Assembly: GCF_963921235.1 (NCBI RefSeq)
Contig: NC_086103.1
Location: 19,468,001-19,532,000 of the forward strand
Direction: 5' to 3'
Origin: Mobula hypostoma
Lineage: Eukaryota
Length of the DNA: 64,000 bases
Positions 11,645 to 64,000 of the stretch are shown piece after piece. Under the pieces are notes generated by a model. It did no database searches, was not told the DNA's origin, and saw nothing but the letters and a program-made list of their open reading frames with translations. Position 1 is the stretch's first letter. Each line of letters starts with the position of its first letter. The translations under genes and the position numbers were made by a program.

Positions 11645-11696
11645 AAACTGTTACGAACCCCGTGACAGGAATAAAGAACCAGCAGAGATGGAAAAC

Positions 11697-13134
11697 AAAC
11701 AACACACATCAAAGTTGCTGGTGAACGCAGCAGGCCAGGCAGCATCTATAGGAAGAGGTGCAGTCGACGTTTCAGGCCGAGACCCTTCGTCAGGACTAAC
11801 TGAAGGAAGAGTGAGTAAGGGATTTAAAAGCTGGAGGGGGAGGGGGAGATGCAAAATGATAGGAGAAGACAGGAGGGGGAGGGATGGAGCCGAGAGCTGG
11901 ACAGGTGATAGGCAGAAGGGGATACGAGAGGATCATGGGACAGGAGGTCCGGGAAGAAAGATGGAGGGGGGGGGGTGACCCAGAGGATGGGCAAGAGGTA
12001 TATTCAGAGGGACAGAGGGAGAAAAAGGAGAGTGAGAGAAAGAATGTGTGCATAAAAAAGAGTAACAGATGGGGTACGAGGGGGAGGTGGGGCCTAGCGG
12101 AAGTTAGAGAAGTCAATGTTCATGCCATCAGGTTGGAGGCTACCCATACGGAATATAAGGTGTTGTTCCTCCAACCTGAGTGTGGCTTCATCTTTACAGT
12201 AGAGGAGGCCGTGGATAGACATGTCAGAATGGGAATGGGATGTGGAATTAAAATGTGTGGCCACTGGGAGATCCTGCTTTCTCTGGCGGACAGAGCGTAG
12301 ATGTTCAGCAAAGCGGTCTCCCAGTCTGCGTCGGGTCTCACCAATATATAAAAGGCCACATCGGGAGCACCGGACGCAGTATATCACCCCAGTCGACTCA
12401 CAGGTGAAGTGATGCCTCACCTGGAAGGACTGTTTGGGGCCCTGAATGGTGGTAAGGGAGGAAGTGTAAGGGCATGTGTAGCACTTGTTCCGCTTACACG
12501 GATAAGTGCCAGGAGGGAGATCAGTGGGGAGGGATGGGGGGGATGAATGGACAAGGGAGTTGTGTAGGGAGCGATCCCTGCGGAATGCAGAGAGAGGGGG
12601 GGAGGGAAAGATATGCTTAGTGGTGGGATCCCGTTGGAGGTGGCGGAAGTTACGGAGAATAATATGTTGGACCCAGAGGCTGGTGGGGTGGTAGGTGAGA
12701 GCCAGGGGAACCCTATTCCTAGTGGGGTGGTGGGAGGATGGAGTGAGAGCAGATGTACGTGAAATGGGGGAGATGCGTTTAAGAGCAGAGTTGATAGTGG
12801 AGGAAGGGAAGCCCCTTTCTTTAAAAAATGAAGACATCTCCCTCGTCCTAGAATGAAAAGCCTCATCCTGAGAGCAGATGCGGCGGAGACGGAGGAATTG
12901 TGAGAAGGGGATGGCGTTTTTGCAAGAGACAGGGTGAGAAGAGGAATAGTCCAGATAGCTGTGAGAGTCAGTAGGCTTATAGTAGACATCAGTGGATAAG
13001 CTGTCTCCAGAGACAGAGACAGAAAGATCTAGAAAGGGGAGGGAGGTGTCGGAAATGGACCAGGTAAACTTGAGGGCAGGGTGAAAGTTGGAGGCAAAGT
13101 TAATAAAGTCAACGAGTTCTGCATGCGTGCAGGA
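11697..13134 (-). mobile_element. Penelope-like element, 5'-truncated (RT C-terminus + GIY-YIG endonuclease)
   Basis: ORF 12094-13152 has YYKPTDSHSYL and GVIYCVRCSRCGLLYIGETRRRLGDRFAEH. TSD AG(C/A)AGAGATGGAAAAC at 11681-11696 and 13135-13150. Confidence 0.93.
11761..11798 (-). ncRNA. Minimal type I hammerhead ribozyme in the Penelope tail
   Basis: UAGUC-CUGACGA-AGG-GUCUCGG-CCU-GAAA-C-GUC-GACUG gives stem I AGUC/GACU, stem II AGG/CCU, the conserved core and a GUC triplet. Confidence 0.8.
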
Positions 13135-14012
13135 AGAAGAGATGGAAAACACTTTGGAGTCCAGTATTGCTATTAACTAATATTTATTTTAGTATCTATG
13201 CAATACAGTAATATAAATGTACATAAATCAAACAGGTTAGCAATGATTACATATATAAGTAAATATATCAGCAAGTGTGGAAATATATGTATGAAAAACC
13301 AAGCTTCTTTAAGTCTAGGGGTAAGAAGATACAGTCTTACGATGATGAGTAAAGTTCAGTTCAGTTCGTGGTATTGAGTTGAGTAGTGATGGAGAGAGAG
13401 AGAGAGGAAAAGATTTGAGTCTCCAGGTGAGCTGACGCCATCGATCTTCTCATTGTCCTTCAAAATCCTTTAAAAGTCAGTGAGGCTGGACACATGGAAA
13501 ACTCCCCACCAGTCAACCCTTTTCATTTTTCCACTGCAAGAGCGACTGATCGATCTGCCTGATCGATCCTCCAAAACCCACTTTTCCTGTGGGCACAACA
13601 ATGTTCATTCAGTGTCCAGAACATGTGTCTGAGGTCTATCATCTGACCTCCTATTTTATCTTCCCGTGCTGAGCATCAACTGTCATTCAAATAACTCCTC
13701 CTTCCTCTCTCTGTGAAAGAAATACAAGCAGGCAAAAGTCCTTGAGAAGTGTCAACAACCTGCCGAAAAACATAACATCGAGTGTCCATTAAATAACGCC
13801 CTCGGTCACCATAGCAACTTACGAGCTGCTCGGTGCTGTCTCCAACTCAGCAGAAATCCGAAAGTTAACCAGTTCCTTCTCGTGCCTTAAAGTGACAGTC
13901 CAATAGTTAGTCTTCGACACCCTCTCTCTTTTCAAAACAACAGGTCGGTGTTAAATAAATCTCTCTCTTTTCATAACCATAGTTCATAGGGGTAATTCAG
14001 GACCCCGTCACA

Positions 14013-14024
14013 CTCCGCTTCCTC
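14013..14024 (-). promoter_or_regulatory. Polypurine tract
   Basis: GAGGAAGCGGAG immediately before the 3' LTR. Confidence 0.7.
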
Positions 14025-17000
14025 AGGAAAAAAATTCTGACGAAGGCAAGAATTTTTTTTAGTCTAAATGTAAAGTACAGAGTTGGAAACAATACAGGTG
14101 AAATCATCAGGTGACAGAGCAAAAATGTGTACAATTTCCAACTTAATATCTGGATAACTAATCAGCTATAATATTGTCAGTACCTTTCCAATGTTTGATT
14201 TTTAAGTCACACTCTTGAAATATCAGACTCCAATTTAACAACCTTCTATTTTTATCCTTCATCTTAGTTAGAAATATCAACAGATTATAATCCATGTAAA
14301 CCACAAGTGGTCTCTGGGCAACAGAAAGATTTCAAGGTCTCTGTACATAGACCTTATGATGTTGTAATGCCAGAATAAGTGCTAGTAATTCCTTTTCAAC
14401 AGTTGAATAATTTTTCTGGTGTACATTAAAGTTCTTTGAGAAATAAGCTACTGGATGTTCAATGTCATTCACTCCTTCCTGTAACAGTACGGCCCCAGCA
14501 ACTTTGTCACTAGCGTCTATTGCTATAGAAAATGGCTTTGAAAAATCAAGAGCTTTGAGCACAAGATTATAACAAAGGATGGTTTTCAGATGTTCAAATG
14601 CCTACTGGCAAAGGTCATTCTATACAAGTTTTTCACCCTTCCCCAGGAGTTTTGTTAGGGGGAGAGCGATGTCAGCAAAGTTCTTACACAACTTACAATA
14701 ATACCCAACCATTTCTAAAAACCTTCTTAAAGCTTCCTTGCAGGCCAGAACAGGAACTTCAGCAATAGCTTGAACTTTGGTCTGTACAGGAGCCAGTTGG
14801 CCTTGGCCCTCCACATAACCCAGATATGTAACTGTGACATGGCCAAACTCACTTTTAGTGAGGTTCACAGTAAGATTGGCCTTGGAAAGTCTGTCAAACA
14901 GTTTTTCTACCGCTGCAATATGCTCTTCCCATGTGTCATTCCAGACCACTAAATCATTGATATAAGTCCCTGTGCTTTCTAAACCTCCAATCACAGAATT
15001 GATCATTCCTTGAAATGTCTCTGGAGCATTTTTCATCCCGAAGTATAAAACATTGTACTCATACAGTCTAGACGGTGTCACAAATGCTGATATCTCTTTA
15101 GCCCTCTCTGTTAAAGGAACACCCCAGTATCCTTTTAACAAGTCAATCTTAATAAGGTATTTAGCCTTCTCCACTCTATCAATACAGTCATCCATTCTCT
15201 TTCCTTGTTCTTTCTTGTTTCTAATTCCTTCTTCAACCCTTTTACTTTTTTCAAAGTTCATTCTATGAAGATGCCGTTTCATAGGCTGGGCTGAATTTAT
15301 GAAGTGATGCACTGCACTTGTGCCCCATTTCAAAATGCCAATTAGTCCTTTCATTTGCTTTTGCAACCTAGGGTCCAACTGATGGACCTTATCAGTAGTA
15401 TTTTCCAAAACAATGGAATTCTGACATTTTGGTGAGACTAGATTCAGTGGGTAAACATGTTTTTCCACTCCATTATCAGATTCCATGACTCCATTTTGTT
15501 CCATAACAATTCTCCCAGCTGCAATTCTAGCAAACAAGTGTCTTATTTTGATTCGACCATCTTGTAAACTTCCCTTTGCAAGGACACAAAGCTTATTAAA
15601 TCTCTTCCAGAGTTACCTGAGTAGGGTCAAAGGTCCTTTTAGCCTGTAACTGAATACAAGTTCCAACAAACTACCCTTCACTGTCTTCTGAATTGAATCT
15701 CCAACAATAAATAAGAGGAGGGGAACCCCCTCATCCCAATTTTTTCCAATTTCTCACACAATATGTTTTAATCATGGTCTTCAGAGTTGAGTTGAGCCAT
15801 TCCAAGCTTCCCTTGGACTCTGTGTGATATGTAGATGACACCATGTGTTTAGCTTCCACTTCTCTAACTATCTCCTGGAATGTTCTCGAAGTAAAGTTAC
15901 TGCCCCGGTCAAATTGAATTCCTTTGGGTAGATCTACCAGTGTGTAAAACTTACTGAATGCTGTTACCACAGTCTTGGCTTCCGTGTTTTCAAAAGACAT
16001 TGCTTCAGGGGACCTAGACACAGCACACACAATTGTTAACACATACTGATAACCAGCTGCCGTCTTTTGCAACGGGCCTACACAATCCACTATGATCCTA
16101 GGAAAAAGTTCTCTAAGAGCAGATATTGGTTTAAGTAGTGTTACCTAAATAACCTGATTAGATTTCTCCTCAACTTGACAGGTATGGCAAGTCCTGTTAC
16201 AATTCACAACATCCTTTCTTAAACTAGGCCAGTAAAATTCCTTCGTAATCCTGTTCACTGTCTTTCTCACTCCATGCAGTCCACCTAAAGGCATACTGTG
16301 AGCCATGTTTAAAATTTCAGCCCTGTAAACTTTCAAAACCACCATGTGACTTGTAGGCACAGTGGCTGGTCTCCACTTCCTAACACCCCATCTTTAAGGT
16401 AATGTCCCACTGATGCTCTCTGAACCTTCTGTCCTGTGAGAGCTATCTCCCTTAAAGCCACCATTCCAGAATCTCGCTTCTGTTCCTCTATAAATTCTTT
16501 CCTCAATAATGACAAATCTTTCTCATACACCTTACTTTCCTCAGCCTTACTACCCTCTAAAGTCCTGCTGAAATCTGAAAGGTAGAAAAGTCTGTGACAC
16601 ATCATCATAATTTAAACCTCTGGTCTTGCTATCATAGGCCTCAACAGCAGCTTTGCTCATCAGCTGAACAGCCATTCAACCTTATCTTGGAGAGGTGTCA
16701 ACATGCCTCCATTGTTTACTAAACTCAGCACCATCATCAGGCTTATGAGAACCATGTATACATTATGGAAGAGACCAAACAATCCACCCATCTGATTATG
16801 ACCTTCACTTTGACTTGCTTCCATAACATCACCCTGAATAACAGCATGACCTTGCAGGTGTTCAAATGTCCAAACAAAATTCCACAGAGTAGCACATCCT
16901 TGCTCAGCAGGCCTTTGTCCTGCGAGCAGGGTCAAAGGTCGCGCAACCAATCCAACCTTTTCCAGCATTTCATCCAAAAATCCAGGAAGAGCACTTTTCC

Positions 17001-18067
17001 CATTATTTTCATTAACACTGACCTCATCAATTTCCACTTCTTCACCAACTTTTAAAACAAAGTCTAATACAAGTGACTGAGAATCCTCACATTCCACTGG
17101 TACCAAGGTTAACCCCTTATTCACTGAACCAAGACCCTCTGGGCACAAAAAAAATGCATTCCTTTCCACCCAAGCCAGGCACCTCAGACTTCAACTGAGC
17201 CTTAGCACGAGGTTCAGAATCCTGTGAAATCACAGGTACTTCAACAACCTGAACACATTCAGTCGGAACAGCTGCCTTGTCTGGGCTGTCATCACTTGTT
17301 CCAGTTTCAAATTCAAGGTCACCCCGAACCTCCCAGCTATTCTCTGGCAAACTCTCATCTGGAGTAAACTCAATCTCGTGGGTTAAAACTTCTTCGTCTC
17401 CTTTCTTATCAAACCCCTGCAGAGTAGTGGCATCCTCTGCATCTGGGTATGCCCTTATATCATCAAGAACACAACTTTTCAATTCATCACACAAAACAAG
17501 CCCTTCTGTGCTGTAAAAATCATTAGGGTCCGACACTAAATCTCTTTGATGCAACCTCTCCCTTTTAAACTATCTCTGCCTTTCTGCCACGTGATCTTCA
17601 CGTTGCCATTTCTCCCTTTCGAGCTGTCTTTCTCTTTCTGCCTCTTCTCTCCGTTTTGCTGCCTCTGCTCTCTATTTTGCTGCCTTTCTAGCCTCTCTCT
17701 TGAGTTGTTTTAATTTCAATTCATGCTCCATTCTTAATTTTTCCAACTGAAGCTGAAGCTCATCCTCAGCAGATTCACCTTCCACGAACAACTCTAACGC
17801 CTCCTCATCAAAAGTTCCCTTATCTATATAATGCTGGGTTGTTACCGTCTGCATCTGAGCTCTCTTCATTTTAGTGGTCACCTTTAGTTTTACCTTTTGA
17901 GCGATTGCCAACAGCAGAACCATCGTAGCATCATCCAACGCTTCCGGGGTTGGTTCCAACAGGAACTCCTCAACACTAACATCCACTTCTGCTGTATTTC
18001 CACACAACCAAATCAAAAGGGATTTTCCCTAATCAACTCAAACAAGCCTCCCACCCAATTTGTTCAT

Positions 18068-50808: not shown

Positions 50809-52704
50809 CCTGTTTCTCCTGTCATAAGAAACGGAGAAGCAGAAAGCTAAAACAAGAACTAGCTCAGGCTTTTGTTCTGTCAGCATATCATGTACTGAAC
50901 TGGATTCAAAGGAGTTTCCCATGGACTTTGACCTATTTTGTGAGACTATCCCAATGAAGGTTTCAAAGAGATTATTGAAAACAAAATGAAAAGAAATCAT
51001 CACATTATTGCCAATTGGCCTCAGGAATAAACACAAAAAATTCTAGGATGTTCTTAGCAGATTAAGCACTGCTAAGAAATACAGATAATTTATAAAATTA
51101 AGGACTTTACCATTTTAATGCAAATCAATGATTCGCATTGATTCCAATATATTTTATCAGAGTCATAGACTGAGGTTGCATGATTGTATTAGCAGTACTT
51201 TATAACTGTGAGCTAAGTATGTGTATTAATTAAATTAGATTAGATTTAGATTAGATTCAGCTTTATTGTCATTGTGCCGAGTACAGATACAAAGCCAATG
51301 AAATGCAGTTAGCATCGAACCAGAAATGCAAAGAATAGTGTTATTTACAAACTAACTGCGAATAAAAAGTAAGTGCTACAGTACACAAATATAAAAGTAC
51401 TGAGACAGTACAATGTGGGTGCAATACTGCTTAGTGCAGTGATGTGAGGTTCAGCAGGGTCACAGCCTCAGGGAAGAAGCTCTTCCTGTGCCTGCTGGTG
51501 CAGGAACAGAGGCTCCTGTAGCACCTACCGGATGGGAGGAGAGTAAAAAGTCTATGGTTAGGGTGAGACTCACTGCTGGATGGAAAAGCTCAGCTGATAT
51601 CTCCAAAGGGATGAGTGCAGGTTCTCCTGTGCCACGAAATGACAAATTATTGTTTTGCCTCATAAGAGATGTTTAGATCAAGTTGTAGGGGGTGATGAGT
51701 TGTTGACTCTACCACAGACAGAATAATTCTTTCTTGCTAAAGCAACCCATCTGGATTCTTTTATTACTGTGATTTGTTGGCAATCTCTGATTCATTATTA
51801 TAAAATACACTCATACTTTCAGGAACTTTTTATGGTTATGCTTTGGCAAGCATTCACATATTGAGCAAACACAGACTGTTCTACTATGAATGCTTGCAAG
51901 AAAATGAATCTCAGGGTAGCATATGGTGACATATATGTACTTTGATAATAATTTACTTTAGACTTTGAACCTTGAACTTTGAACAAACAATCTGCTGGAG
52001 GAAGTCAGCGAGTCAAGCAGCACTTATCAAAGAAAGATAATTATCGATATTTTGGGTCAAATGCTGCATCTAAACTCAAAGATTGACTCATGACAATGTT
52101 TCAGTTGCCAATTTTGAAAATGAAACTTTGTGCTAGTCAATGGGAAATGATAATTTCAACACTGCTAATCCATTAGTCTCTGAGAACTCCATGGCTCCTT
52201 CAGCACTGGGAAATGGGAAGAGGTAAGCGACTTCTGACTGAATGTTGAAGATATTTCAGTATAACTTTGAATTGTGTGTCTGTATGGTGAGTATTGGGTG
52301 GCAGGGTAGTGATACTGTACATCTCTACCAAAGTTGGAATAAGGCACTCTTTCCCTCTGCTAACCTGCAGGTCACTTGGACAAGGTGTAGCAGCTGCTTA
52401 GCCCCTGCCTCACTGACCAGGGTCACATGAAGCCATGGGAACAGGTGGTGGATGGTTGTATGAGCAGCTGGTGTATATCACAAGTCCCGGTTATATGACC
52501 ACTGACACCTGGCTGTCCATCTCTGAAGGGCATTGATAATGGTTGGGGTCACCTGCCTTGTAAGGGCGCTATCCAGAAGAAGGCAGCAGCAAACCACTAC
52601 TGTCAAAAAATTTGACAAGAACAAACAGAAGACCATGATCATCACATCATACAACATGGCGCATAATGATGTTAACACCAGAAGGCGGTGTAAAATGTCA
52701 ATAA

Positions 52705-52710
52705 TTTATT
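52705..52710 (-). terminator. Polyadenylation signal AATAAA of gene 1
   Basis: Plus-strand TTTATT immediately downstream (minus sense) of both candidate stop codons. Confidence 0.6.
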
Positions 52711-52743
52711 CAATGAATATCTGCTTTCCCATTGCCTTGGCTT
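52710..52743 (-). CDS. Gene 1 terminal cytoplasmic exon, option 1 (RSQGNGKADIH*)
   Basis: Acceptor gttttcctag|A is phase-2 compatible. The TGA stop overlaps AATAAA. Confidence 0.55.
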
Positions 52744-52754
52744 CTAGGAAAACT

Positions 52755-52821
52755 TCAAACATTTTGAGTCCTGACGTTCCTGTCATTCATTCTTTTGGGT
52801 TTTTTTCTGTTTTGTGGATGT
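52755..52821 (-). CDS. Gene 1 terminal cytoplasmic exon, option 2 (RHPQNRKKPKRMNDRNVRTQNV*)
   Basis: Acceptor ctctttgcag|A is phase-2 compatible and gives an 85-nt intron. It lies in an antisense retroelement tail. Confidence 0.45.
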
Positions 52822-52906
52822 CTGCAAAGAGTAAGAATTTCAGGTTGTATACTGTATACATTCTCTGATATTAAATTGAACCATTGAAATTTTTTCTTCT
52901 CTTTAC

Positions 52907-52997
52907 CTTGTCAGGCAGCAAATTAATCCAAGGGCAATGGCCAGCTTAACCAACAAGTAAGAAACTATGATGATCAAAATGTTCGAAGGCCGGCACA
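52907..52997 (-). CDS. Gene 1 transmembrane exon with intramembrane Lys
   Basis: Acceptor cttccacag|TG (phase 1) and donor ACAAG|GTAAAG (phase 2). CRPSNILIIIVSYLLVKLAIALGLICCLTR. Confidence 0.85.
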
Positions 52998-53177
52998 CTG
53001 TGGAAGATAAAGCCAATTATTTATTTTCACTCACCGTCTCATTTAGCAGTTAAATACTCCTATCAAGTCATTCTATAAATAACGTAACAATGAAAACATA
53101 CTGTATTTTGGCAGCCAGAGTGACATTAATTTGTGTCAAAACCAAGAAAAGAGAGCTTTTCATTTCATTCAATTTGC

Positions 53178-53237
53178 CTTTTAGTGTTTGGTCATTGGCA
53201 TCTGAATATTTTGGGTCATCAGTTTCAATTAAATGTA
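53178..53237 (-). CDS. Candidate 60-nt stalk exon of gene 1
   Basis: Symmetric phase 1-1 open frame LHLIETDDPKYSDANDQTLK. The acceptor is weak (pyrimidine tract then gtaaaag) and the donor is non-canonical (AAG|GCAAAT). Confidence 0.35.
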
Positions 53238-54299
53238 CTTTTACATATAAATGAGAAAGGAAGAAATGAACGCAAGACTATCGGCTGTCTAAGCTGAAAT
53301 TTTTTTTAAATGGCTTGACGAAAGGAGCATAATTGATTCACATCCATTTATTTAATTATTTAATGATACACCGCGGAATTGGCCCAGCTGGACTTTTGAG
53401 CCACAATGCCCCAGCAACCCCCAACAAACTCAATTGACCCTAACCTAAACATGGGACAACTTACAATGTCCGTTCATCCTACCCATTCACTAGTCTTTGG
53501 CCAGTGGCAGGAAACTGGAGCACCTGGGGAAAGCTCAAACATTCCAAGGAGAGGATGTACAGAGGCACCTTACAGACAGTGCTGGAACTGAACTCCAAAC
53601 ACGGACACCCCCGTGCTAACCACCACGCTACCATAGCGCCCAGTTTTCAATCCTGGCTGCTGTTAGGATTGGGAAGATATTAACCACTTGCCTTTTTAAC
53701 TACTATACAATTTATTTTTTCATTTTTAACCTGCAATCCTACTGCTCAGATCACTGAGGTTGAGTTTGCAAGCTATGGAATGGGATAATAACGTTATGGC
53801 AGCAGCCACAAATTGCTTCAACTCTCGTCCCCTTCACTCCTGCACCTGCTGTGGCTATAGCATGTGGGCTTAACAGCAGCCTCTGTCAGCTTTCCGAAAA
53901 ATCCACCTCCATGATCTGTCTTCCCCATTCAATGATCCTGTTACGTATTTACTATTTCAGTAGTGCTTGAGTAATCTTGTAAATGTCTTGCTAAAGCATT
54001 CTGGTTCAGTAATATGCATAAATGCATTGATTGCATACAGCATCATGCTACCACATGATACATGTGCACCTCACTTAAAAGTTAGACCCTCTTTTCAGAC
54101 TCGCGTGTCTTCCTTTGTATTAGTTTAATGTTTTGAAGTTTCAAAACATAAGCTACCCCTTCAACATGTTTGCCATATTTTCTGATCGACTCAAGTCCTA
54201 TTGACTGAGTGATATCAGAAAAAGAATCAGGTTTATTATCACTGACATATATTGTAAAATTAGTTTTTTTCAAAACTGGCACTACCAAAGACATGCGAC

Positions 54300-55200
54300 A
54301 ACTTACCGGTAGTTCGAAAGCAAAGGAATTCCGTTAAAACGCTTTTTTTGAGGTAAATTGTGGTAATCAATGAAGTGAGCAAAGACGGAGCAAATTTGCG
54401 AGATGTGCCCTGCAGCTGCGCTGCAAAATCGACACACTTGGAGTTGGAGCCGTGCTGGTTGGAGTGAATGATTTGGAGGGGAGAAGATGGGACAGAGGAG
54501 TTTCAATGCCTGGGTGCAAGGGTGAATCACTCTAAACGCCGAGCTGTATTGGAGAGGTTGAGATCGGCTTCTTTGGCAGTGAAATTCAGAAAAAGGCGAA
54601 TTCAAGGCCTGGAGCAATTCACCATGGTGAGGCCCGGGTCCAACCCATACAGACTGGAAAGGCAGAGCGTTGAGAGTCGGGCAAGGTTGGATCACTCTGG
54701 GTGCCAAGCCAATTCAAAGAGATTAAGAATGGCTCCATCATCAGCAAAATCGAGGCCTGGAGTGATTCACTGACAGCAGGCCAGAGGACTACTGTGTGGT
54801 TTGGACGATTTAAATGCCAGCCCAGATAATCTGGGGACTCCTCTCTCCATGACACAAAGGCTGTGAGGCTGCTCCCAGCGGCTGTGATTCATGTCTGCAA
54901 ATTCTGTGGCAATTTGCCCTGCTGATACGATGAACTGAATGCCAAGGCTATGAGCCTATTCTGTGCTGCCCTGGGGATTTGGATCTAAGGACTCAATCTG
55001 GTTCAGAATGCTGCTGTTCTTACTCACTTGTATTGTTTATATGATTTCTCTTTGTGTTTATTTTCTCTGTGTCTGTGGGGACTGGGAAGTTGGTCTTTTT
55101 TTAACTGGGTTCTTTTGGGTTCCTTGCTTTGCAACTGCCTGTAAGCAAACAAATCTAAAGGTTGTATCATTAATACATTTTTTGATAATAAATGAACTGT
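54300..55200 (+). repeat. Interspersed non-autonomous repeat ending in a Rex-type 3' tail
   Basis: The tail gttgtat...atacattttttgataataaatgaact is shared with copies at about 34200-34320, 51890-51980 and 52790-52890. No coding signal. Confidence 0.45.
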
Positions 55201-55513
55201 ACGTCAAAAATGAGAGTAGATTGAGGTGTCTCTCCTATTCATGCCAATTAACCTCAATTTCCCTGGTCCATAAGTCTACCCTTACACCGTGCATTGTACC
55301 TCAACTCCCATTGTTTTGAGTTGCGTAGTTGGATTTTGTTTTTAAACTGCTATATTTGTGAACATCTGTAACTAAACGGTGAGTGATATAGAAAGTAAAT
55401 CTAAATAAAAAGCAAGTTACCTTACCGAAAGAGCAGCCAATCACACAAACTTGTTACAAAGCAATCACGCAAACTTTCTGTGCAGGTTACAAAGGACACT
55501 AAAAAGCACTCAC

Positions 55514-55783
55514 ACTTGCTGTTCTTCCGATATGGAATGAAAATCTTGGGTATATTTTGATGAAAAACAGCACACATCCATTTCGTCTTGTCTGCGCCAG
55601 ATTTTAGAATAATCTGCTGGAAAGATTGCCCTTCCTGTCTGAGGTCATTCAGAGTTTCCTCTTGAATGGTTTTGTCATCACCATTGATCCAAACCAGTCT
55701 CGTTGATGCAGTGACGTGAGACACAGAGCAGCTCAGGGTAATGTTGTCTCTCCCAGAATCTTCATTAGGTGGTTCAGCTGTGA
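55514..55783 (-). CDS. Gene 1 Ig exon F, C2-type WxC domain, paralogue of exon B (90 codons)
   Basis: Acceptor ttttcgcag|TC and donor AAGT|GTGAGT. VTAEPPNEDSGRDNITLSCSVSHVTASTRLVWING...KTKWMCAVF. Confidence 0.9.
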
Positions 55784-56519
55784 CTGCGAAAAACAGAATA
55801 TCATTGGGATTATGACAGCAACACCAAGTTTCTACTTGATTTTTTCAGCATAACTCAACATTGTCAATTCATCCATCCCATCCGTCCCAGAATCTGTTTA
55901 GCCTCCTAATGTCAGGTTGAAGGCATCACAGTATAAGAATAAGGACAAGTATACTGGCTACCAGCTACCTCCCCCAGGCTGTGAGGCTCCTGAACGTCCT
56001 GCTACCACCCTGTACACATTACTTATGACAGCACCAGTAACACTATACTGTTCTATATTTAATTATAAGACCATAAGATATAGGAGCAGAAGTAGGCCAT
56101 TCGGCCCATCGAGTCTGCTCCGCCATTCAATCATGGTCTGATCCAATTCTACCAGTCATCTCTACTCCCCTGCTTTTACCCCATACCCTTTGATGCCCTG
56201 GATAATCATCTATCTCTGCCTTAAGTACACCCAATGACTTGGGCTCCACAGCCACTCGTGGCAACAAATTCCACAGATTTACCACCCTGTGACTAAAGTA
56301 ATTTCTCCGCATCTCAGTTAATGCATATATGCACCTTACATCAACATTTACATCAAAGGAATAGTTTTTATTTTATCTGTTAATATTATTTTATGTGCCA
56401 TATGTGATATATGTACTGTGATTTGCACCTCCATCCCCAAGGAATGTTATTTCGTTTATTTGTATACATGTGTATGTTGAGTGAAATTAAACTTGATAGC
56501 GCACACACACACATACACA

Positions 56520-57046
56520 CACTGAGTGTACATTCATGGTTTTCTGCTGCTGTAGCCTATAAACTTCAAGGTTTGATGTGTTGAGCATTCAAGATGCTCT
56601 TCTGCACACCACTGTTGTAACATGTGGTTATTTTGAGTTACTGTCACTTTCCTGTCAGCTTGAATCAGTCTGGCCATTCTCCTTTCACCTTTCTCATTAA
56701 CAAAGCATTTTCATCCATAGAATTGCTGCTCACTGGATGTTTTTTTTTTTACTTTTTGCACCATTCTCTGTAAATTCTAGAGACAGGTGTGCATGAAAAT
56801 TCCAGGAGATCAGCATTTTCTGGGATAGTCAAACCACCCAGTCTGGCACCAACAATTAATTTCTGGTCAAGGTCACTTAGATCACATTTCTTTCCCATTC
56901 TGATGTTTGATCCAAACAACAGCTGAACTTCTTGACCACATGGGCATACTTTTATACATTGAGTGGTTGCCAGGTGATTAGCTGATTGGATATTTGCATT
57001 AACAAGCAGGTGTACAGGTGTACCTAATAAAACTGGCCACTCACTA
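56520..57046. mobile_element. Tc1-like non-autonomous element (second copy about 58330-58672)
   Basis: The two copies align over about 300 bp. Terminus gtgtacctaataaaactggccactca. Confidence 0.65.
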
Positions 57047-57130
57047 TATTTATTTTCATTGGTTTGAATAAAACATTTAAAATCTTTCAAGGAATACTTA
57101 TAATGTAACACAACAAGTGGAGTTTTTTAA

Positions 57131-57549
57131 CCCTTACATACTGTTTGGGTCAATTTTGACCCGTTTTGACATTTGACAGCAGTAAAAACACCCTAAGTGC
57201 AATTTTTTTAGCCGAAATTTGATGACTTTTCCTAAAGTGACCCAAAATGCGCAAAAATGAGAAGATATAAAAGTTTTATACTTTTGTACAGGTGCTACAA
57301 ACTTTTGTACATTGAGGCTGTCCCAGGTCAAATTTGACCCGTAACTATTGAAATGGATTTTAGATCTCTGAAACATTAATTAAGGATTAATCACCCATTT
57401 ATTAATGTCAGATATGCTATTTATACATTCTAAATATATCTGTGCTTCAAAATTTGGCATAGACACTTGCTATGAGGGGATTCTTGGGCCGGGTCAAAAT
57501 TGACCCAGTCCATACTGTGAAGGTATAGAATATGAACTGTATGTAAGGG
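57131..57549. mobile_element. piggyBac-like MITE (419 bp)
   Basis: TTAA on both sides, 11-bp perfect TIR CCCTTACATAC/GTATGTAAGGG, and three internal GGTCAAWWTTGACC palindromes. Confidence 0.85.
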
Positions 57550-57757
57550 TTAAATGTTGTCTGATTGTGGCATTTCAGAGGAAATTTTGTATGTAGCATC
57601 ATACATAAACCTTTAAGGAGAAACTTGGAGAGTTGAGAGGAAAGAAAGAGACATATGTGAGAGTAGCAGCAACTTTGGGAACAACTTGTCACCAGTTCTC
57701 TATTCATTCCTAAAATGGTAACATTTCCCTAATGACTAAACAAAACAGCGATACTAC

Positions 57758-58096
57758 CTCTGACTGTGATTAGTTCAATGGTCACATGTTTATATGATCC
57801 TGTGGAGCATGTGTAAATTCCAGCATCTTCAAACTGCACAGGGACAATCCTCACACTGAAATTCTTGCCATTCAGATTTCCCACTGTGGTTCCCAGTCGA
57901 TTTCCAAAGTAGCTCCTGTCAACGTCAATTGGCTCTGAGCTGTGAGTAGAAGCTATTTCGGCCTGCTGATTCTGAAAAAGTCGCGACCTCCAAGTCCATT
58001 TGGTTTGATTGAACTTAGCAGAAGCTTCACAGATCAGGTCCAGTTCACTGTGTCCTGTGTCAGACCGATAAACTGTGTATGTCCTATTATGTAAAT
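57758..58096 (-). CDS. Gene 1 Ig exon E, V-set domain, paralogue of exon A (113 codons; absent from the ORF track)
   Basis: Acceptor cttcttgcag|AT and donor AGAG|GTAGTA. Hand translation is fully open: DLHNRTYTVYRSDTGHSELDLICEASAKFNQTKWTWRSRLFQNQQAEIASTHSSEPIDVDRSYFGNRLGTTVGNLNGKNFSVRIVPVQFEDAGIYTCSTGSYKHVTIELITVR. Confidence 0.9.
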
Positions 58097-59087
58097 CTGC
58101 AAGAAGGGAAGAGGGAATAAAGAATTACATTTTAACAGAAGCTGAGGTATAGATGTTCCAAGTTTCTAAACTTGGCCACTGGGTTATCAGCTGGAAGGGT
58201 TGCACTGGGACAGAAAAGTCAACAGGGAGCTGGGATAAATCAGCTGCCAACCCAGATGCCTGTTGTTGAAACACTGAAGTTCATCTTCCCCAAACACGCT
58301 CCAGCAAACTGATGCATTTGGACTGGATGTAATAAGCTATCTGTTACATGATCATAGGACAGCTGCTGCTCAGTGGATGTTTATTAATTGCACCATTCTC
58401 TGTAAACTAGATCTAGAGACTGTTGTATATGAAAAGCCCAGGAGATCAGCAGTTTCTGAGATACTCCAACCACCCCATCTGGCATCAGCAATCATTTCAT
58501 AGTCAAAGTCACTTATATCACATTTCTTACCCATTCTGCCCTTTGGTCTGAACAACAACTGAATCTCTTGACCACATCTGCATGCTTTTCTGTGTTGAGT
58601 TGCTGCCACGTGATTGGCTGATTAGATATTTGCATTTTCTAGCAGGTGTACAGGTGTGGTCACTGAGTGTACAATTAGATCAAGGACAGAACGAAGTCTT
58701 TCCTCACTGAAGGATGCACTGCTAACTTTTGTGAGTGACTTTCTTTCCTACACTCAGGAGAAAGTTTCGGAAAAGATTCCAATTTCATAATGCTTGTATT
58801 GGTGTATTTAATTTATTTGTATTTCACTGTTTGTACTGAACTTGCTTTCCTCGATTTCTGTACTTTATTCCAGTTGATTCCTGCAGCAGAATTGAATCCA
58901 TTGATTCACCTGGGTGGCTCCATCAGTCTCAGTGCCACCCCTTCATTTTTACGCCATATCCCAGGGTAGAAGCATTTACCACACCCTGCAGTGAAATCCC
59001 ACGGTGGAGTGTGCTCACTGTACAATATGTGGAACAGTTTATAATCAACAACATTTCATACCTGCTCCTGGGCAGCTTTGGACTCAC

Positions 59088-59354
59088 CCTCATCCACTCC
59101 AACACTGGTGTCTCCAGTGAGAACAATGGAACCTTTTTCTTGCACTTCCCACGTGTACAGACTGGGATCTCCTGTTCCAACGTGTCGGACCATCAGATAG
59201 ACGGTGTTATTCAGGTGGATCTGATCAGTGTTGTTGTTCCTCTGGGATGAGCCTCTTGGTTTCCAGTGGAGACTGACGGTATCTGGGAGTCTGGAGATGG
59301 TACAGCTGAGGGTGACGTCACTGCCCATTACAGGTCTCTGTGAGTCGGCCTCAA
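59088..59354 (-). CDS. Gene 1 Ig exon D, C2-type domain with F-strand Cys replaced by Trp (89 codons)
   Basis: Acceptor ttccacag|TT and donor GAGG|GTGAGT. VEADSQRPVMGSDVTLSCTISRLPDTVSLHWKP...SLYTWEVQE. Confidence 0.9.
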
Positions 59355-59674
59355 CTGTGGAAACAGACACATGATGTGTGGTTCAGTTCCCCACAGGCTC
59401 TCTGAACTGCTCCAGGCAGAATTATGGAGACTGGACTAAATATATCTGAGAAATGAAAATGTTAATTTACAACCTCTCAGGGATTCCACTGGACCTAGTG
59501 CTCTGAGGATTGTTATCCACAAGATGCTTTAATATTTTTAATAAGATTTATTCTGGGCTGGGTGACAGAACTACAGCATTCCAACTGAATTCCAATAATC
59601 TGTTGGGAATATTTGTGGAATATCTCACAAAAAGTTGCTTTCTTGAACCCTTTTCAGCTTCTTGACTAACTTAC

Positions 59675-60019
59675 CTTTGATCCCAACTACTTCCCACTGC
59701 CTCAAGATGTTCCCACCTGACTTTGTCTGATTCCAGGTGAAGAGTCCAGCAAGTTGAAAGGTGGGTTTCCTGATTTTCAGATTAAGGGTACCCCAGTCCA
59801 CATGTAACCTCTGGGAAATGTCTGGTATTTTACTGAACTCATCACTCCAATGTACGGCCCACCGCTGATCTTCTCTGTGAAAAGTGGCCAATCGCTTTGT
59901 GGTTTGTTGCCCTGTGTGTGGCCTCCATTCCAAATCAATGGAGTCACTTCCAGGATTGTCTGGCCCATTCAATACAAAGTTCCCTTCCTGATGGAAAAAG
60001 TAAATAGAATTCAGGCTTC
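59675..60019 (-). CDS. Gene 1 Ig exon C, V-like domain with no cysteines (115 codons)
   Basis: Acceptor ttccttgcag|GA and donor AAAG|GTAAGT. GSLNSIYFF...DLEWRP...GTLNLKIRKPTFQLAGLFTWNQ...WEVVGIK is open and homologous to 7784-8130. Confidence 0.85.
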
Positions 60020-60554
60020 CTGCAAGGAAAACAAATGGCATTTTAAAATCAGACAACTTCTCAATCTGACCCATGAAATAATTAATACCATGGAGAATTT
60101 CATCTCAGAATACTCTAATAATAATTTACATAGGAACTTTCAGAGCAGATTGCATCAGGACAATGGAGCATTTAGCAGGAATAGGAGCAGTCACTTTCCT
60201 GCAGGTTTTAATTATACTATATTGGGTCTTAGAATCCTCAAGCATTCTCCCAGCCCCCAAATACTTTACAAAATTCAGATATATTTCCAAACATTCCTCA
60301 ATTTACAAGAAGGATGATTATCCTGGAAAACATTTCACCTTGCAAAATATTGTAAGTCAAAAAATTCGATAAGATCTGTGATAGGTGCCGTATTTTCTAT
60401 TACCAGGGGGCTGTGCAGTGCTTGTTATAGGCAATTAAAAACATGTACTGATATGGAATCAAAGGTGCTGTGGTAAAAACCGGTTAATTGAACATTTGCA
60501 ACTTGAGAAATTACTGCAATAAAAATGAAAATGACTAACAATGGAAACACATAA

Positions 60555-60860
60555 ATGGATTCATGGGGGAGTCAAGAACCAAAGGGCACAGAATTAGAAT
60601 AGAAGAATGTCCCTTTAGAACAGAGATGTGGAGGAATTTCTTTAGCCAGAGGGTGGTGAATCTGTGAAATTCATTGCCACAGATGGCTATGGAGTCCAAG
60701 TCAATGGGCATATTTAAAGTGGAGATTGATAGATTCTGGATTAGTAAAGGTGTCAGAGGTAATGGGAGAAGGCAGGAGAATGGGGTTGTGAGGATAATAA
60801 ATCAGCCGTGATGTAGCAGACTCGATGAGCCACATGGCCTAATTCTGCTCCTATGTCTTA
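60555..60860 (+). mobile_element. CR1 3' fragment (further antisense CR1 ends at about 6420-6730, 21330-21800, 41135-41410, 56060-56320, 63100-63570)
   Basis: FRTEMWRNFFSQRVVNL motif and the CR1 terminal hairpin. Confidence 0.75.
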
Positions 60861-61864
60861 GGGTCATATTGTCTTCTGATTAGAAGACGGCAGGTGGACC
60901 GTTTCATATCACTAACAGACTGGAGCATTGCCAGTGATTGAGCAATGAAAATCACAGCTCCACAAGTGGCTGGAAACAGAGGCAGCAAGGTTGCAAAGTG
61001 AAATTTAGGAATGTTTGAATGTTCAAACAAATAACTTTAGAAAAGATTTTCCAAAGTGCACAAGTATAAGTCAATGTTGAGTTTATTGTCAAGTATGATA
61101 GATGCAATAAAATACAACATTCACAGGAAAAATATGAATGAAACATAACGATGCATAATTGTGACACAAAAGAACACAATTAAAACAAAATAAAGCTCGG
61201 TCCATTGAGAGCAAAGTGGTCCTATCATTGTCCACCTATTGATTAGCGGTGTTGCATTTGCTTCAAGAACTGAATGTTTGAAAGGAAGTCGCTGTCCTTG
61301 AACTTAGTGATGTGGGACTTCAGGCTTCTTTACCTCCTGCCCAATGGTAGCCTGCAAGGTGCAGATTTCTGATGATAAACATCGCCTTCTTAAGGCACTG
61401 CCTGATGGTGGAGAATGGCAAAGCAGCAGCGGAATCCCATGGTCATTTCAGACATTGGTAGAAAGTATTGCTGCCAATTATAGTCTGGGATGCATTGCAT
61501 ATGGTGGATGAGTGAGCCAATTTGGGAAGCTCCCCAAATTTAAATTGATCCTGTGCATGGCGTCACCAAGGAAAGATGTCAGAAAAGTAAGAGAGCAATG
61601 TAAATGTGGAAACAACCTGCTGCTTTTTAAATTAAAGAAGGCTACACAAAGGAACTAAGTTGTTTTAAAAGGAGAGCTTCAATATTCACTGACCAAGCTC
61701 AGTGCTCGCCTTTTCTCAGTGAAAGAAGTTCCTCCTTTAATTTTTTTTCTCTGTCACAAGTTATGAGTTATGCAAAAGATTGCCCAGATCAGCTTGATCA
61801 TTTGTTCTCCCATTGATTTGCCTGTTACATTCTCAGATGACATAATTTCTGTGTATTCAAGTGA

Positions 61865-61927
61865 AGGTCAATGACCTTGCAGCTCCCACAATACATCAGC
61901 CTTCAATCAGAAAGGAAGTGATGTCAC
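61865..61927. promoter_or_regulatory. Candidate intronic enhancer: IR1 nuclear-receptor element + ETS/CRE-like composite
   Basis: AGGTCA-A-TGACCT at 61865-61877 and GGAAGTGATGTCAC at 61914-61927, in non-repeat intron sequence. Confidence 0.3.
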
Positions 61928-62302
61928 CAGGATCAGTGAGATGGGGAGACAAGATTGGCTTGAAGAAACAAGGGTTCCACTTGCATTGTTCTAGCTTAGA
62001 ATGGCATTTGTTATCTAAATATTTTAGAATATAAAACCAACATTAACAGCCCTATTTTCAGACATATAAACAATTGATATTGTCAATGAATTTACAAGGA
62101 GTGTGGTTGATACACACAGATCAGTCTCAGTCTCACCATTGTGAGTAATGTATATTGCTGGGTCAATTGTCTGAGGGTCTGTCCAATTATGGGGCCTCCC
62201 AAGAAGGATATACAAATAATATAAAAATATCTTTTCACGGTTGTCAGAGTGATTAGCAAGTGATAAGATTACCTGATTGACAGCAGGCATTTAGTCACTC
62301 AC

Positions 62303-62563
62303 CATTGTATTTCACATAGTATGTGACAAAAAGTGTGGGCTTATTTCCACTAAACACACCACACATCCAATTCCCTCTGCCTCTGTCAGCTTTCTGTATG
62401 ATCAGACTCAGTGATTTCTCTTCCCCAGTCAGTATTTTGTCTCCAACAGTTTTACCGGCTCCGTTGATCCAAACCAGTCTGGTTGATGCAGTGACGTCAG
62501 ACACAGAGCAGCTCAGGGTAACGGTGTCTCCCTCAGTCACTGTATCAGACGGTTCAGCTGTGA
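62303..62563 (-). CDS. Gene 1 Ig exon B, C2-type domain with WxC motif (87 codons)
   Basis: Acceptor ttccacag|TC and donor AATG|GTGAGT. VTAEPSDTVTEGDTVTLSCSVS...LVWING...RGNWMCGVF. Confidence 0.9.
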
Positions 62564-62643
62564 CTGTGGAAACAAGTTATTTTTAGATTTCAAACAGTAC
62601 ATTTTTCTCTCTGAAAGCTGCAGTAACACATTCTCACTCTTAC

Positions 62644-62979
62644 CTTTTACTGTGATTAGTTTAATGGTCACAAATCTATTTGACTCCAGAAAACACGTGT
62701 AAAGCCCCGCATCTCTGAACAGTACAGGGATAATCCTCACATTGAACTTAACACCATTATAATGTGCCACCTTGGGGACCAGCCGATTCCCAAAAGATGT
62801 CCTGTCCATGTTGATATGTTGATATCTGGATGCTGAGGCTATTTCTCTCCCCCAGCTTTGAGCAACTGTCCTCCATGTCCACACAGCTTTGTGGTAATAG
62901 GTAACAGAATGACAGATCAAATCCAGTTCACTCTGATCTGAGCCTGAGCGATAAAGTTTGTAGCTCTTTTTATATAAAG
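62644..62979 (-). CDS. Gene 1 Ig exon A, V-set domain (112 codons, phase 1-1)
   Basis: Acceptor tttgtag|CT and donor AAAG|GTAAGA. Open frame ALYKKSYKLYRSGSDQSELDLICH...WTWR...FNVRIIPVLFRDAGLYTC...IKLITVK has the B-strand Cys, C-strand Trp and D-x-G-x-Y-x-C motif. Confidence 0.9.
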
Positions 62980-64000
62980 CTACAAAGAGGAAAGAGAAAA
63001 CAAAGTTAGAATTTCTGAGATAAAGATAAAAATTGGGATAATTACCGGCAATTATAAGTGTGTTTCTTGCGCCGATCTTCACTGATTTGGTTTTTGTTAA
63101 AGTACTAAGTCCATGGGACAGAATAGTGTCAATCAGCCCATCGAGACTGCTCCTGTCATGGCTGATATATTTTCCCTCTCAACCCCAATCTCTTGCTTTC
63201 TCCATGTACCTTTGATGCCCTACAAATCAAGAGCTATCAACTTCCTCTTTAAATGTACCCAGTATTTTGACCTCCACAGCTGTCTGTGGCAATGAATTTC
63301 AAGGAATCCACCTCCTTTGCTATTCTGATGACATACCCTCTGGTCCCAGACTCCGAGACTATTTGAAACATCCTTTCCAAGTTCACTCTCTCTAGCCCTT
63401 TCAATATTCAGTAGGTTTTAGTGCGATCTCTCCTCTTTCCTCTGAACTCCAGGAAATACAGGACCAGAGCCATCAAATGCTCCTCAAACATTAACTCTAG
63501 CATTCCAGGATCATTCTCATAAATCGCTTCTACCCTCTTCAATGCCAGCATATCTTTTCTTAGAAACAAGAGAAAATCTGCAGTTGCTGGAATTCCAAGC
63601 AACGTACACAAAATGCTGGAGGAACTCAGCAGGTCAGGCAGCATCTGTGGAAAAAAGGTACAGTTGACGTTTCGGGACAATACCCTTCGGCATCTTTACT
63701 TAGATATGGAGCCTAAATCTACTCACAGTGAGTTCAAGAATGATACAGATGAGTGGAATTCAATACCTTTGACCCAAGAACCAATTCATTCAACTGGGAA
63801 GCTGGCATTGCAGCAGAAACTTCTGCTGAATGATTGAACAAGCATTCAGAAGGAGAACACAAGTTCCACATCAGAACGCATTAAGGGAAACACATAAGTT
63901 ACAGGAATAACCACCAGTACATCATCACGAACTATGCTCCCCTATTTCCAACCACAAGCAACTCTCATCAATGATGAAAAGAGAATAGGAAGGGAATAGA

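What the first reader, a model, noticed from the sequence alone, without database searches (positions are those of the whole stretch)
52705..62979. Hidden multi-Ig activating-type receptor gene with a transmembrane lysine
Seen: six Ig exons with canonical AG/GT sites, all phase 1-1 and stop-free (1818 nt, 606 aa). They are followed by a TM exon ILIIIVSYLLVKLAIALGLICCL with a central Lys, a 10-22 aa tail with no Tyr/ITIM/ITAM and no Lck-binding CxC/CxH, and an AATAAA. Established: a mid-membrane Lys with a short tail marks receptors that pair with acidic-TM adaptors such as DAP12/TYROBP (TREM, KIR2DS, activating teleost DICPs). Inference: this is the activating member of a tandem, possibly paired, receptor family in a cartilaginous fish. 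I cannot assign it to a named gene, and it may be undescribed.
Basis: partly seen in the sequence, partly recalled or inferred. Interest (0 to 1): 0.82.

Follow-up and report, generated by a model that had tools for sequence, protein, structure and literature searches.

The report
Ray activating-type multi-Ig receptor gene
This is most of an intact ray gene for a cell-surface receptor with a lysine in its membrane anchor. It belongs to a large shark-and-ray family with "on" and "off" versions, most resembles CD4 and LAG-3, and I found no paper that describes it.

Summary
On the minus strand there are six stop-free, phase 1-1 exons with AG/GT sites (1818 nt), a transmembrane exon with a central Lys, a short Tyr-free tail and an AATAAA.

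The exons are real. Their order and every junction residue match predicted proteins of Hypanus sabinus (LOC132405181, 78-90% identity per exon, same Lys-TM) and Pristis pectinata (LOC127569165).

Three corrections:
- The gene is incomplete in the window. There is no leader exon, and the orthologues carry a further leader and two Ig domains upstream, so eight Ig domains are likely.
- The proposed tail exon starts inside a high-copy repeat and is not conserved in either orthologue.
- Four RNA-type runs gave no support for exons E, F or TM, so transcription here is unshown.

The family has named members only in cartilaginous fishes, nearly all called "uncharacterized". Of 160 retrieved members, 33 carry the conserved YLLVKL-type TM with short tails and 63 carry uncharged TMs with two ITIMs.

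Its V-C2(WxC) module is closest to LAG-3 by sequence profile and to CD4 and LAG-3 by predicted structure, but it is neither gene. Adaptor pairing is inferred, not shown. The scan flagged this same stretch twice before.

The parts
62644..62979 (-). Exon A: V-type Ig domain, like CD4/LAG-3 D1. Has the Cys pair and the WTW and DAGLYTC motifs. Phase 1-1.
   Evidence: Splice sites. 90% identical to Hypanus P0043 residues 37-147. Weak Pfam Ig_3 hit.
62303..62563 (-). Exon B: C2-type Ig domain with a WxC motif (NWMC). Phase 1-1.
   Evidence: Pfam ig, Ig_3. 78% identical to P0043 residues 149-234. The WxC aligns with PWGC of human LAG-3 D2.
59675..60019 (-). Exon C: V-like Ig domain without the canonical disulfide (LAGLFTW in place of DxGxYxC). 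In most family members this is the N-terminal domain type.
   Evidence: No Pfam hit. AlphaFold pLDDT 89, all-beta. Foldseek best hits are 2B4/CD244 D1, nectin-1, P0 and CAR V domains. 87% identical to P0043 residues 236-349.
59088..59354 (-). Exon D: C2-type Ig domain in which the second Cys is Trp (LYTWEV). The change is shared by the equivalent domain in Hypanus, Pristis, Mobula, Rhinoraja, catshark and nurse shark, so it is not a defect.
   Evidence: 98.9% identical to the Mobula hypostoma paralogue P0028 and 90% to P0043. Sequences.
57758..58096 (-). Exon E: second V-type Ig domain, 47% identical to exon A.
   Evidence: Pfam V-set at 26.8 bits. 83% identical to P0043 residues 440-551 and 81% to Pristis P0031 residues 636-747.
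55514..55783 (-). Exon F: second C2-type Ig domain with WxC (KWMC), 49% identical to exon B.
   Evidence: 82% identical to P0043 residues 553-639.
52907..52997 (-). Transmembrane exon, phase 1 in and phase 2 out: ILIIIVSYLLVKLAIALGLICCL, with Lys at position 12 of 23.
   Evidence: 84% identical to the P0043 TM. The motif is conserved in 33 family members.
52755..52821 (-). Putative last coding exon (tail HPQNRKKPKRMNDRNVRTQNV plus stop). Uncertain.
   Evidence: Has an AG acceptor and an open frame. Its 5' part lies in a high-copy repeat at 52781-52888. The tails of the Hypanus and Pristis orthologues are different.
52705..52710 (-). AATAAA polyadenylation signal, 45 nt after the putative stop.
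   Evidence: Read directly from the sequence.

Best explanation
The stretch holds the 3' three quarters of a type I membrane receptor gene: six Ig exons, a TM exon and a short tail. The animal is a ray, probably a devil ray.

The gene is the orthologue of Hypanus sabinus LOC132405181 and Pristis pectinata LOC127569165. It belongs to a multigene family whose named members are all from cartilaginous fishes. Family members are strings of four Ig domain types: a Cys-less V, a C2, a V, and a C2 with WxC.

The family has two main signalling classes. One has an uncharged TM and a long tail with two ITIMs, which marks it as inhibitory. The other has a conserved TM with a central Lys and a short tail without motifs. 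This gene is of the second class.

By the rule established for KIR2DS, TREM, SIRP-beta, NKp44 and activating NITR/DICP receptors, such a Lys pairs in the membrane with the Asp of a small ITAM adaptor of the DAP12 type. Ligand binding by the ectodomain would then activate the cell through the adaptor.

Shown here: the exons, the junctions, orthology, the conserved Lys-TM class, the ITIM class, and CD4/LAG-3-like V-C2 modules. Inferred: adaptor pairing, the activating outcome, the cell type, and the missing leader plus two Ig exons upstream of the window.
For: - Exon limits, phases and the 1818-nt frame; the TM exon and tail.
- Per-exon identity to Hypanus P0043 is 78-90% in the same order, A-B-C-D-E-F-TM. 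Junction residues are the same (..ITVKVTAEP....NGSLNSIYFF....GIKV.ADSQ....VGVDEDLHN..).
- Pristis P0031 is leader-C-D-A-B-C-D-E-F-TM(K) with a 7-10 residue tail. A nurse shark protein with the eight-domain plan is on record in UniProt and nr (P0119).
- The Lys-TM motif is present in 33 of 160 retrieved relatives, from orders that span sharks, skates and rays. ITIMs are present in 63.
- The Pristis K-type and ITIM-type neighbours are 70% identical over 733 residues.
- In Mobula, the inhibitory-type paralogue P0028 shares exon D at 98.9%.
- All eight exons are open. A neighbouring copy in the same window shows what decay looks like: a stop, a frameshift and a LINE insertion.
Against: - No transcript support. 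In four RNA-type runs, depth over exons E and TM was 0 to about 5 (TM: one run at 2.2, the others 0). The little depth over exon F carries a mismatch and sits on a stretch conserved among paralogues.
- No protein identical to this gene turned up among Mobula proteins of 154-1192 aa. It may be unannotated, or called a pseudogene because of damage outside the window.
- The 5' end is not in the window.
- The tail exon is uncertain.
- No adaptor was examined. One review reports that the FcR gamma chain is absent from cartilaginous fish (PMC5742104), so the partner is unknown.
Confidence: 0.72

Rival explanations
1. The gene is a silent or recently dead copy in this species. The visible exons are still open, but the gene is not expressed, or is broken upstream of the window.
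For: Depth over exons E and TM was 0 to about 5 in four RNA-type runs. No identical protein was found in the searched protein sets, although many Mobula paralogues are there. The family clearly sheds pseudogenes: one lies at 8131-4825.
Against: About 1975 nt of coding sequence in eight exons has no stop or frameshift, and all splice sites are kept. The nearly invariant family residues are kept; the one exception, F to V in exon C, also occurs in two other members. The tissues of the runs are unknown, and immune receptors are often cell-type restricted.
Confidence: 0.22
2. The six Ig exons are two genes, or a gene plus a fragment: a four-domain CD4/LAG-3-like gene (A-D), followed by a two-domain gene (E-F-TM).
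For: A-B-C-D has the V-C2-V-C2 plan of CD4. E-F repeats A-B at 47-49% identity.
Against: There is no TM, tail or leader exon between D and E. D and E are both phase 1 and only 991 bp apart. The D-E junction peptide VGVDEDLHN is kept in continuous proteins of Hypanus and Pristis (as VEVDQDLHN), and in Mobula (VGVDEDLRM) and nurse shark (IDMNQNFHG) in looser form.
Confidence: 0.03
3. It is the ray's CD4 or LAG-3 gene itself.
For: LAG-3 is the best solved-structure sequence hit for the V-C2 module (E 4e-12). CD4 and LAG-3 are the best structural matches. It has a WxC motif.
Against: It has six to eight domains, not four. The tail has neither Cx(C/H) nor (F/Y)xxL(D/E), the motifs that define CD4 and LAG-3 from sharks to humans (PMC10768021). 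The TM carries a Lys. There are dozens of paralogues per genome. The D-type C2 domain has YxC or YxW, not WxC.
Confidence: 0.01
4. The family is the already published skate MDIR family (modular domain immune-type receptors, Cannon et al. 2006), so nothing here is new beyond one more member.
For: From my memory of the abstract, not checked here, MDIRs are built from four Ig domain subfamilies in variable numbers (one to six). MDIR1 has a positively charged TM and MDIR2/3 have ITIMs, which matches this family's plan. pIgR is the second-best PDB sequence hit for the V domain, and MDIR V domains are said to resemble CD300 and pIgR (PMC3031540).
Against: Three searches that returned skate relatives at 75-89% identity returned no Raja eglanteria or MDIR-named protein. 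The V domains here lack the extra Cys pair typical of CD300/pIgR-type V domains (read from the sequence; the rule is from my own knowledge).
Confidence: 0.2

Closest known systems
CD4 / LAG-3 family (vertebrate MHC class II co-receptors)
   Same: Alternating V and C2 domains, each encoded by one phase-1 exon. WxC in strand F of the C2 domain. One V-type domain lacks the disulfide, as in CD4 D3. The predicted V-C2 unit is a rigid rod with one strand running through both domains. LAG-3 is the best sequence-profile hit. CD4 D1D2, CD4 D3D4 and LAG-3 D3D4 are the best structural hits, at TM 0.6-0.74 against under 0.47 for nearly all other two-domain Ig proteins.
   Different: Two to sixteen domains instead of four. 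A multigene family with tens of copies per genome. The order starts with the Cys-less V. The tail has no Cx(C/H) or (F/Y)xxL(D/E); it has either a Lys-TM with a short tail or two canonical ITIMs. The ligand is unknown.
Paired activating/inhibitory Ig receptors that use DAP12-type adaptors (KIR2DS/KIR2DL, SIRP-beta/alpha, TREM, NKp44, CD300; teleost NITR, DICP, LITR)
   Same: The same logic: near-identical ectodomains joined either to an ITIM tail or to a TM with a central Lys and a short tail. The genes are clustered and fast-evolving, with pseudogenes.
   Different: No detectable sequence relation to those families: every named hit was a cartilaginous fish protein. Different domain types. The adaptor is untested, and FcR gamma is reported missing in cartilaginous fish (PMC5742104).
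Skate MDIR family (Cannon et al. 2006, Immunogenetics 58:362)
   Same: A cartilaginous fish modular family with four Ig domain types, variable domain number, and one form with a charged TM and others with ITIMs (from memory of the abstract, plus PMC3031540).
   Different: Said to resemble CD300, pIgR and TREM V domains. No MDIR-named protein appeared among the relatives.

Membership tests
Activating class of paired IgSF receptors (DAP12-type associated) | Type I membrane protein with Ig ectodomains | tested here: met
   Six Ig exons plus one TM exon. The leader is not in the window.
Activating class of paired IgSF receptors (DAP12-type associated) | Lys or Arg in the core of the TM helix | tested here: met
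   Lys at position 12 of 23 in ILIIIVSYLLVKLAIALGLICCL. Conserved in 33 relatives.
Activating class of paired IgSF receptors (DAP12-type associated) | Short cytoplasmic tail without ITIM, ITAM or ITSM | tested here: met
   Every reading of the tail is 2-22 residues and free of Tyr. The tails of the 23 K-class relatives read in full are 1-45 residues and carry no tyrosine-based motif. Which tail exon is used is uncertain.
Activating class of paired IgSF receptors (DAP12-type associated) | Inhibitory counterparts with related ectodomains and ITIMs | tested here: met
   63 ITIM-bearing relatives, including Mobula ones. The Pristis pair is 70% identical. Exon D is 98.9% identical to a Mobula paralogue of the inhibitory type.
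Activating class of paired IgSF receptors (DAP12-type associated) | Physical and functional dependence on an acidic-TM ITAM adaptor | not testable with these tools
   Needs co-expression and co-precipitation with a K-to-A control.
Activating class of paired IgSF receptors (DAP12-type associated) | Expression as a spliced mRNA in leukocytes | tested here: inconclusive
   Four RNA-type runs of unknown tissue gave next to no depth on exons E, F and TM.
CD4 / LAG-3 | Four ectodomains, V-C2-V-C2 | tested here: not met
   Six domains in the window and eight in the Pristis orthologue and nurse shark relative.
CD4 / LAG-3 | WxC in strand F of the C2 domains | tested here: met
   NWMC in exon B and KWMC in exon F, invariant in alignment A1 and aligned with LAG-3 PWGC. 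The other C2 type (exon D) has YxC or YxW.
CD4 / LAG-3 | Rod-like V-C2 unit with a strand shared by both domains | tested here: met
   The AlphaFold model of the orthologous module has a strand at residues 100-116 across the domain border. Top Foldseek hits are CD4 and LAG-3. This is a prediction, not a solved structure.
CD4 / LAG-3 | Tail with Cx(C/H) (CD4) or (F/Y)xxL(D/E) (LAG-3) | tested here: not met
   Neither motif is in any tail reading. The criteria come from PMC10768021.
CD4 / LAG-3 | Genomic position beside the conserved CD4/LAG-3 neighbour genes | not testable with these tools
   The rest of the window holds only transposon ORFs and a family pseudogene.
Skate MDIR | Sequence identity with MDIR1-5 of Raja eglanteria | tested here: inconclusive
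   No MDIR-named or Raja eglanteria protein appeared among 78, 103 and 62 hits. I could not verify that those entries are in the database, and the paper is not held.
Teleost DICP / NITR / LITR | Detectable sequence homology of the Ig domains | tested here: not met
   The exhaustive HMMER search with exon C gave 26 hits; the 16 I could name are cartilaginous fish proteins and the other 10 were not looked up. The word-index searches returned no bony fish protein.

The most novel reading that the evidence does not exclude
Cartilaginous fishes carry a large multigene family of paired receptors that I could not find described. One class has a Lys-TM and the other has ITIM tails. The family is built from CD4/LAG-3-type V-C2 rod modules in arrays of 2 to 16 domains, and this gene is an activating eight-domain member.

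The family would be a sister lineage of CD4/LAG-3. It is a candidate for the missing NK-cell or myeloid paired receptor system of sharks and rays, possibly reading MHC-like ligands.
Probability: 0.45. Interest if true: 0.75.

Novelty: new member of a known kind. Interest (0 to 1): 0.55.

Why it matters
Paired activating and inhibitory Ig receptors control NK and myeloid cells in mammals and bony fish. As far as I know, almost nothing of the kind has been characterised in sharks and rays, the oldest animals with a human-like adaptive immune system.

This family is ancient: it occurs in elasmobranchs and a chimaera. It is large, has a sharply conserved Lys-TM class and an ITIM class, and uses the same unusual V-C2 rod module as CD4 and LAG-3.

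It therefore offers a concrete set of genes for three questions. How do cartilaginous fish balance activation and inhibition? Which adaptor did they use before, or without, FcR gamma? Where did the CD4/LAG-3 module come from?

The single gene in this window is one ordinary member. The value lies in the family.

Tried and rejected
- **PDB sequence searches with single exons.** These gave only generic V-set hits (pIgR, PD-L1) for exon E and nothing for exon C. Only the family profile reached LAG-3 and CD4.
- **RNA evidence.** Two run searches found four or five RNA-type runs holding 2-9% of the words. Laying them on 52700-58699 showed that the signal was almost all transposons and a repeat at 52781-52888. 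There was no spliced joint between gene exons.
- **ITIM-type TM or tail exon downstream of exon F.** Only a chance match inside a repeat at 50015-49959, flanked by stops.
- **Leader exon in 62980-64000.** None found.
- **Exon for the Hypanus or Pristis tail peptides.** No convincing match.
- **MDIR paper.** PMC3701310 is not held, and no supplement with MDIR sequences is held.
- **Literature searches** for DAP12 or ITIM families in cartilaginous fish, DICP, and 'obscurin-like' nurse shark protein found no description of this family.
- **Bacterial promoter/terminator scan** of 62900-64000. Irrelevant to a vertebrate gene and ignored.

Full report
**What is in the sequence**

The feature lies on the minus strand. 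I recomputed stop-free stretches and all phase-1 AG and GT sites.

| Exon | Coordinates |
|---|---|
| A | 62979-62644 |
| B | 62563-62303 |
| C | 60019-59675 |
| D | 59354-59088 |
| E | 58096-57758 |
| F | 55783-55514 |

Together they are 1818 nt. Each has a pyrimidine-rich acceptor ending in AG, and a GT donor of the gtaag, gtgag or gtagt type.

The TM exon is 52997-52907. It reads (L)CRPSNILIIIVSYLLVKLAIALGLICCLTR and leaves the frame in phase 2. A further acceptor at 52822 opens a 22-residue tail that ends at a TGA at 52757-52755. AATAAA follows at 52710-52705. Without that splice, the frame stops directly after CCLTR. No version of the tail has a Tyr, a CxC or a CxH.

Pfam sees Ig domains in A, B, D, E and F but nothing in C. 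An AlphaFold model of exon C, built on 26 family sequences, has pLDDT 89. It is a V-set sandwich whose nearest solved structures are disulfide-less or ordinary V domains: 2B4/CD244 D1, nectin-1, P0 and CAR.

**The exons form one gene, and it has orthologues**

An exhaustive HMMER search with exon C found 26 proteins. Several carry the domain two or three times, and many carry it as their first domain after the leader. Every one whose name I retrieved comes from a shark, ray, skate, sawfish or chimaera and is an 'uncharacterized' or 'hypothetical' protein. Across all searches the few other names are automatic: 'CD276 antigen homolog', 'vascular cell adhesion protein 1-like', 'obscurin-like'.

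The best match to the window is Hypanus sabinus LOC132405181 (P0043, 681 aa). Exons A to F and the TM exon match it in the same order at 90, 78, 87, 90, 83, 82 and 84% identity. The residues created by each splice junction are the same.

Pristis pectinata LOC127569165 (P0031, 875 aa) has the same six domains and the same Lys-TM. In front of them it has a leader, a C-type domain and a D-type domain. A nurse shark protein on record in UniProt and nr (P0119) has the same eight-domain plan. The Hypanus model itself begins with an internal Met inside a D-type domain, so it is cut short at the 5' end.

The window has no leader-like exon and no D-type exon between 62980 and 64000. The gene here is therefore most probably eight-domain, with its first three exons beyond the window's end.

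The idea that A-D and E-F are two genes is rejected. Nothing lies between D and E, and the D-E junction is kept in continuous proteins of at least four species.

**The family is a paired receptor family**

- **Lys-TM class, 33 proteins.** They carry a TM of the form ..(S/L)GYL(L/F)VKL(A/G/V)VA(L/I)GLIC.. with the Lys in the middle. Their tails are 1-45 residues long and have no tyrosine motif.
- **ITIM class, 63 proteins.** They carry an uncharged TM (..IIGSLALLLIIILAVVLCL..) and a tail of about 80-150 residues with two canonical ITIMs, typically IHYGSI and VIYAQI.
- **The rest** are partial models, or a third type.

The Lys-TM class occurs in Heterodontus, Scyliorhinus, Chiloscyllium, Cetorhinus, Pristiophorus, Heptranchias, Pristis, Hypanus, Hemitrygon, Mobula, Leucoraja, Amblyraja and Rhinoraja. 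It therefore predates the split of sharks and batoids.

In Pristis, the K-type and ITIM-type genes have locus numbers two apart and are 70% identical over 733 residues. In Mobula, exon D of the window is 98.9% identical to that of a paralogue, P0028. P0028's close isoforms carry ITIMs.

This is the standard signature of paired activating and inhibitory receptors, and the window's gene is of the activating type. That a mid-membrane Lys with a short tail recruits an Asp-bearing ITAM adaptor is established for KIR2DS, TREM, SIRP-beta, NKp44 and teleost NITR/DICP receptors (my own knowledge). For this family it is inference. A review states that the FcR gamma chain is absent from cartilaginous fish (PMC5742104), so a DAP12-, DAP10- or zeta-like partner would be the first candidate.

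**What the family resembles**

A profile of the V plus C2(WxC) module (alignment A1, 16 sequences) finds human and mouse LAG-3 as the best solved proteins, at E 4e-12 to 6e-10. pIgR and neurotrimin follow, then many CD4 entries at about 6e-7.

The LAG-3 alignment runs without a break from the F strand of D1 to the end of D2. It puts the family's WxC on LAG-3's PWGC, and a second stretch aligns with D3-D4.

An AlphaFold model of the module (pLDDT 87) has one strand, residues 100-116, that runs through both domains. That is the rare feature used to define the CD4 rods (PMC10768021).

Foldseek gives matching results in two libraries:

| Library | Top hits | TM-score | Other two-domain Ig proteins |
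|---|---|---|---|
| PDB | CD4 D1D2, rat CD4 D3D4, LAG-3 D3D4 | 0.53-0.74 | 0.47 or below among the listed hits |
| 550,129 Swiss-Prot models | CD4 and LAG-3 | 0.59-0.70 | under 0.47, except LY6G6F at 0.66 |

So the closest known relatives are CD4 and LAG-3. Membership fails on domain number, on the tail motifs that define CD4 and LAG-3 from sharks to humans, and on copy number. The 2023 survey of shark CD4 and LAG-3 does not mention this family.

**Is it already described?**

The one published candidate is the skate MDIR family. As I recall its abstract, the summary is uncomfortably similar: four Ig domain types, one to six domains, one form with a charged TM and others with ITIMs.

I could not read that paper or fetch its sequences. 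Three searches that did return skate relatives at 75-89% identity returned no Raja eglanteria or MDIR-named protein. MDIR V domains are also said to be CD300/pIgR-like (PMC3031540). I give this rival about 0.2. No other paper I could search describes the family.

**Weak points**

- **Transcription is not shown.** Four RNA-type runs laid on 52700-58699 gave very high depth on transposons and on a repeat at 52781-52888. Depth on exons E and TM was 0 to about 5. A few short contigs on the most conserved part of exon F carry a mismatch, so they probably come from paralogues.
- **The tail exon is doubtful.** The repeat covers the acceptor and the first 41 nt of the proposed tail exon. The Hypanus and Pristis tails differ from it, so the true tail is unsettled.
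- **The gene may be unannotated or dead.** No protein identical to this gene was found among proteins of 154-1192 aa. It may be unannotated in this species, fused into a longer model, or treated as a pseudogene.

Against decay, about 1975 nt in eight exons are open and the conserved residues are kept. The copy at 8131-4825 in the same window has a stop, a frameshift and a LINE insertion.

**Verdict**

The gene is one more member of a well-known kind of system, a paired Ig receptor of the activating type with a Lys in the TM. Its family seems not to have been studied and is the nearest thing yet seen to a multigene relative of CD4 and LAG-3. Earlier notes of this scan on the same genome call the animal a devil ray, which fits the near-identity to Mobula paralogues. 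The same stretch was flagged twice by first-stage readers.

Noticed in passing
window 8131-4825, minus strand: A second, decayed copy of the same family, closest to Mobula hypostoma LOC134348858 (K-type). The C-type exon at 8131-7785 has an in-frame stop (VV*NWKP) and a frameshift. The D-type exon at 6413-6111 is intact. The A-type exon breaks off after about 27 codons at 4905-4825.
   Followed up: yes
window 2417-4540 and 1464-2312, minus strand: Long LINE-like ORFs (endonuclease and reverse transcriptase) directly downstream of the truncated A-type exon. This is probably the insertion that cut the pseudogene.
   Followed up: partly
window 52781-52888: A repeat of about 108 bp. It is present on both strands in very many RNA contigs at about 91-92% identity, with depth above 1000. 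It overlaps the intron after the TM exon and the start of the proposed tail exon. It has no second copy inside the window.
   Followed up: partly
window 56065-57100 and 58370-58620: Highly expressed repeats lie in the introns between exons D, E and F, including Tc1/mariner-like transposase fragments (ORFs at 56749-57111 and 58370-58609). They produced many false 'joints' between the two copies in the read layout.
   Followed up: no
proteins P0010, P0039, P0040, P0042, P0045, P0046, P0091 (relatives, not the window): Many K-class members share a conserved Tyr-free tail, ..KRMNR..(A/V)TGNETDD..A(V/I)ALQTLNSD(T/P)DL... It hints at a function of its own. The window's gene and its closest orthologues lack it.
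   Followed up: no
proteins P0002, P0027, P0028, P0041 (Mobula): These long-tailed Mobula members, ITIM-bearing in all but P0028, have an Arg inside the TM (VVITWVVALRLIIILVMVLCL). A charged TM together with an inhibitory tail is an unusual combination.
   Followed up: no
window 9164-18028 and 22600-47107: Most of the remaining window is transposon-derived: reverse transcriptase, integrase and gag-like ORFs. No other host gene was seen between the two family loci.
   Followed up: no
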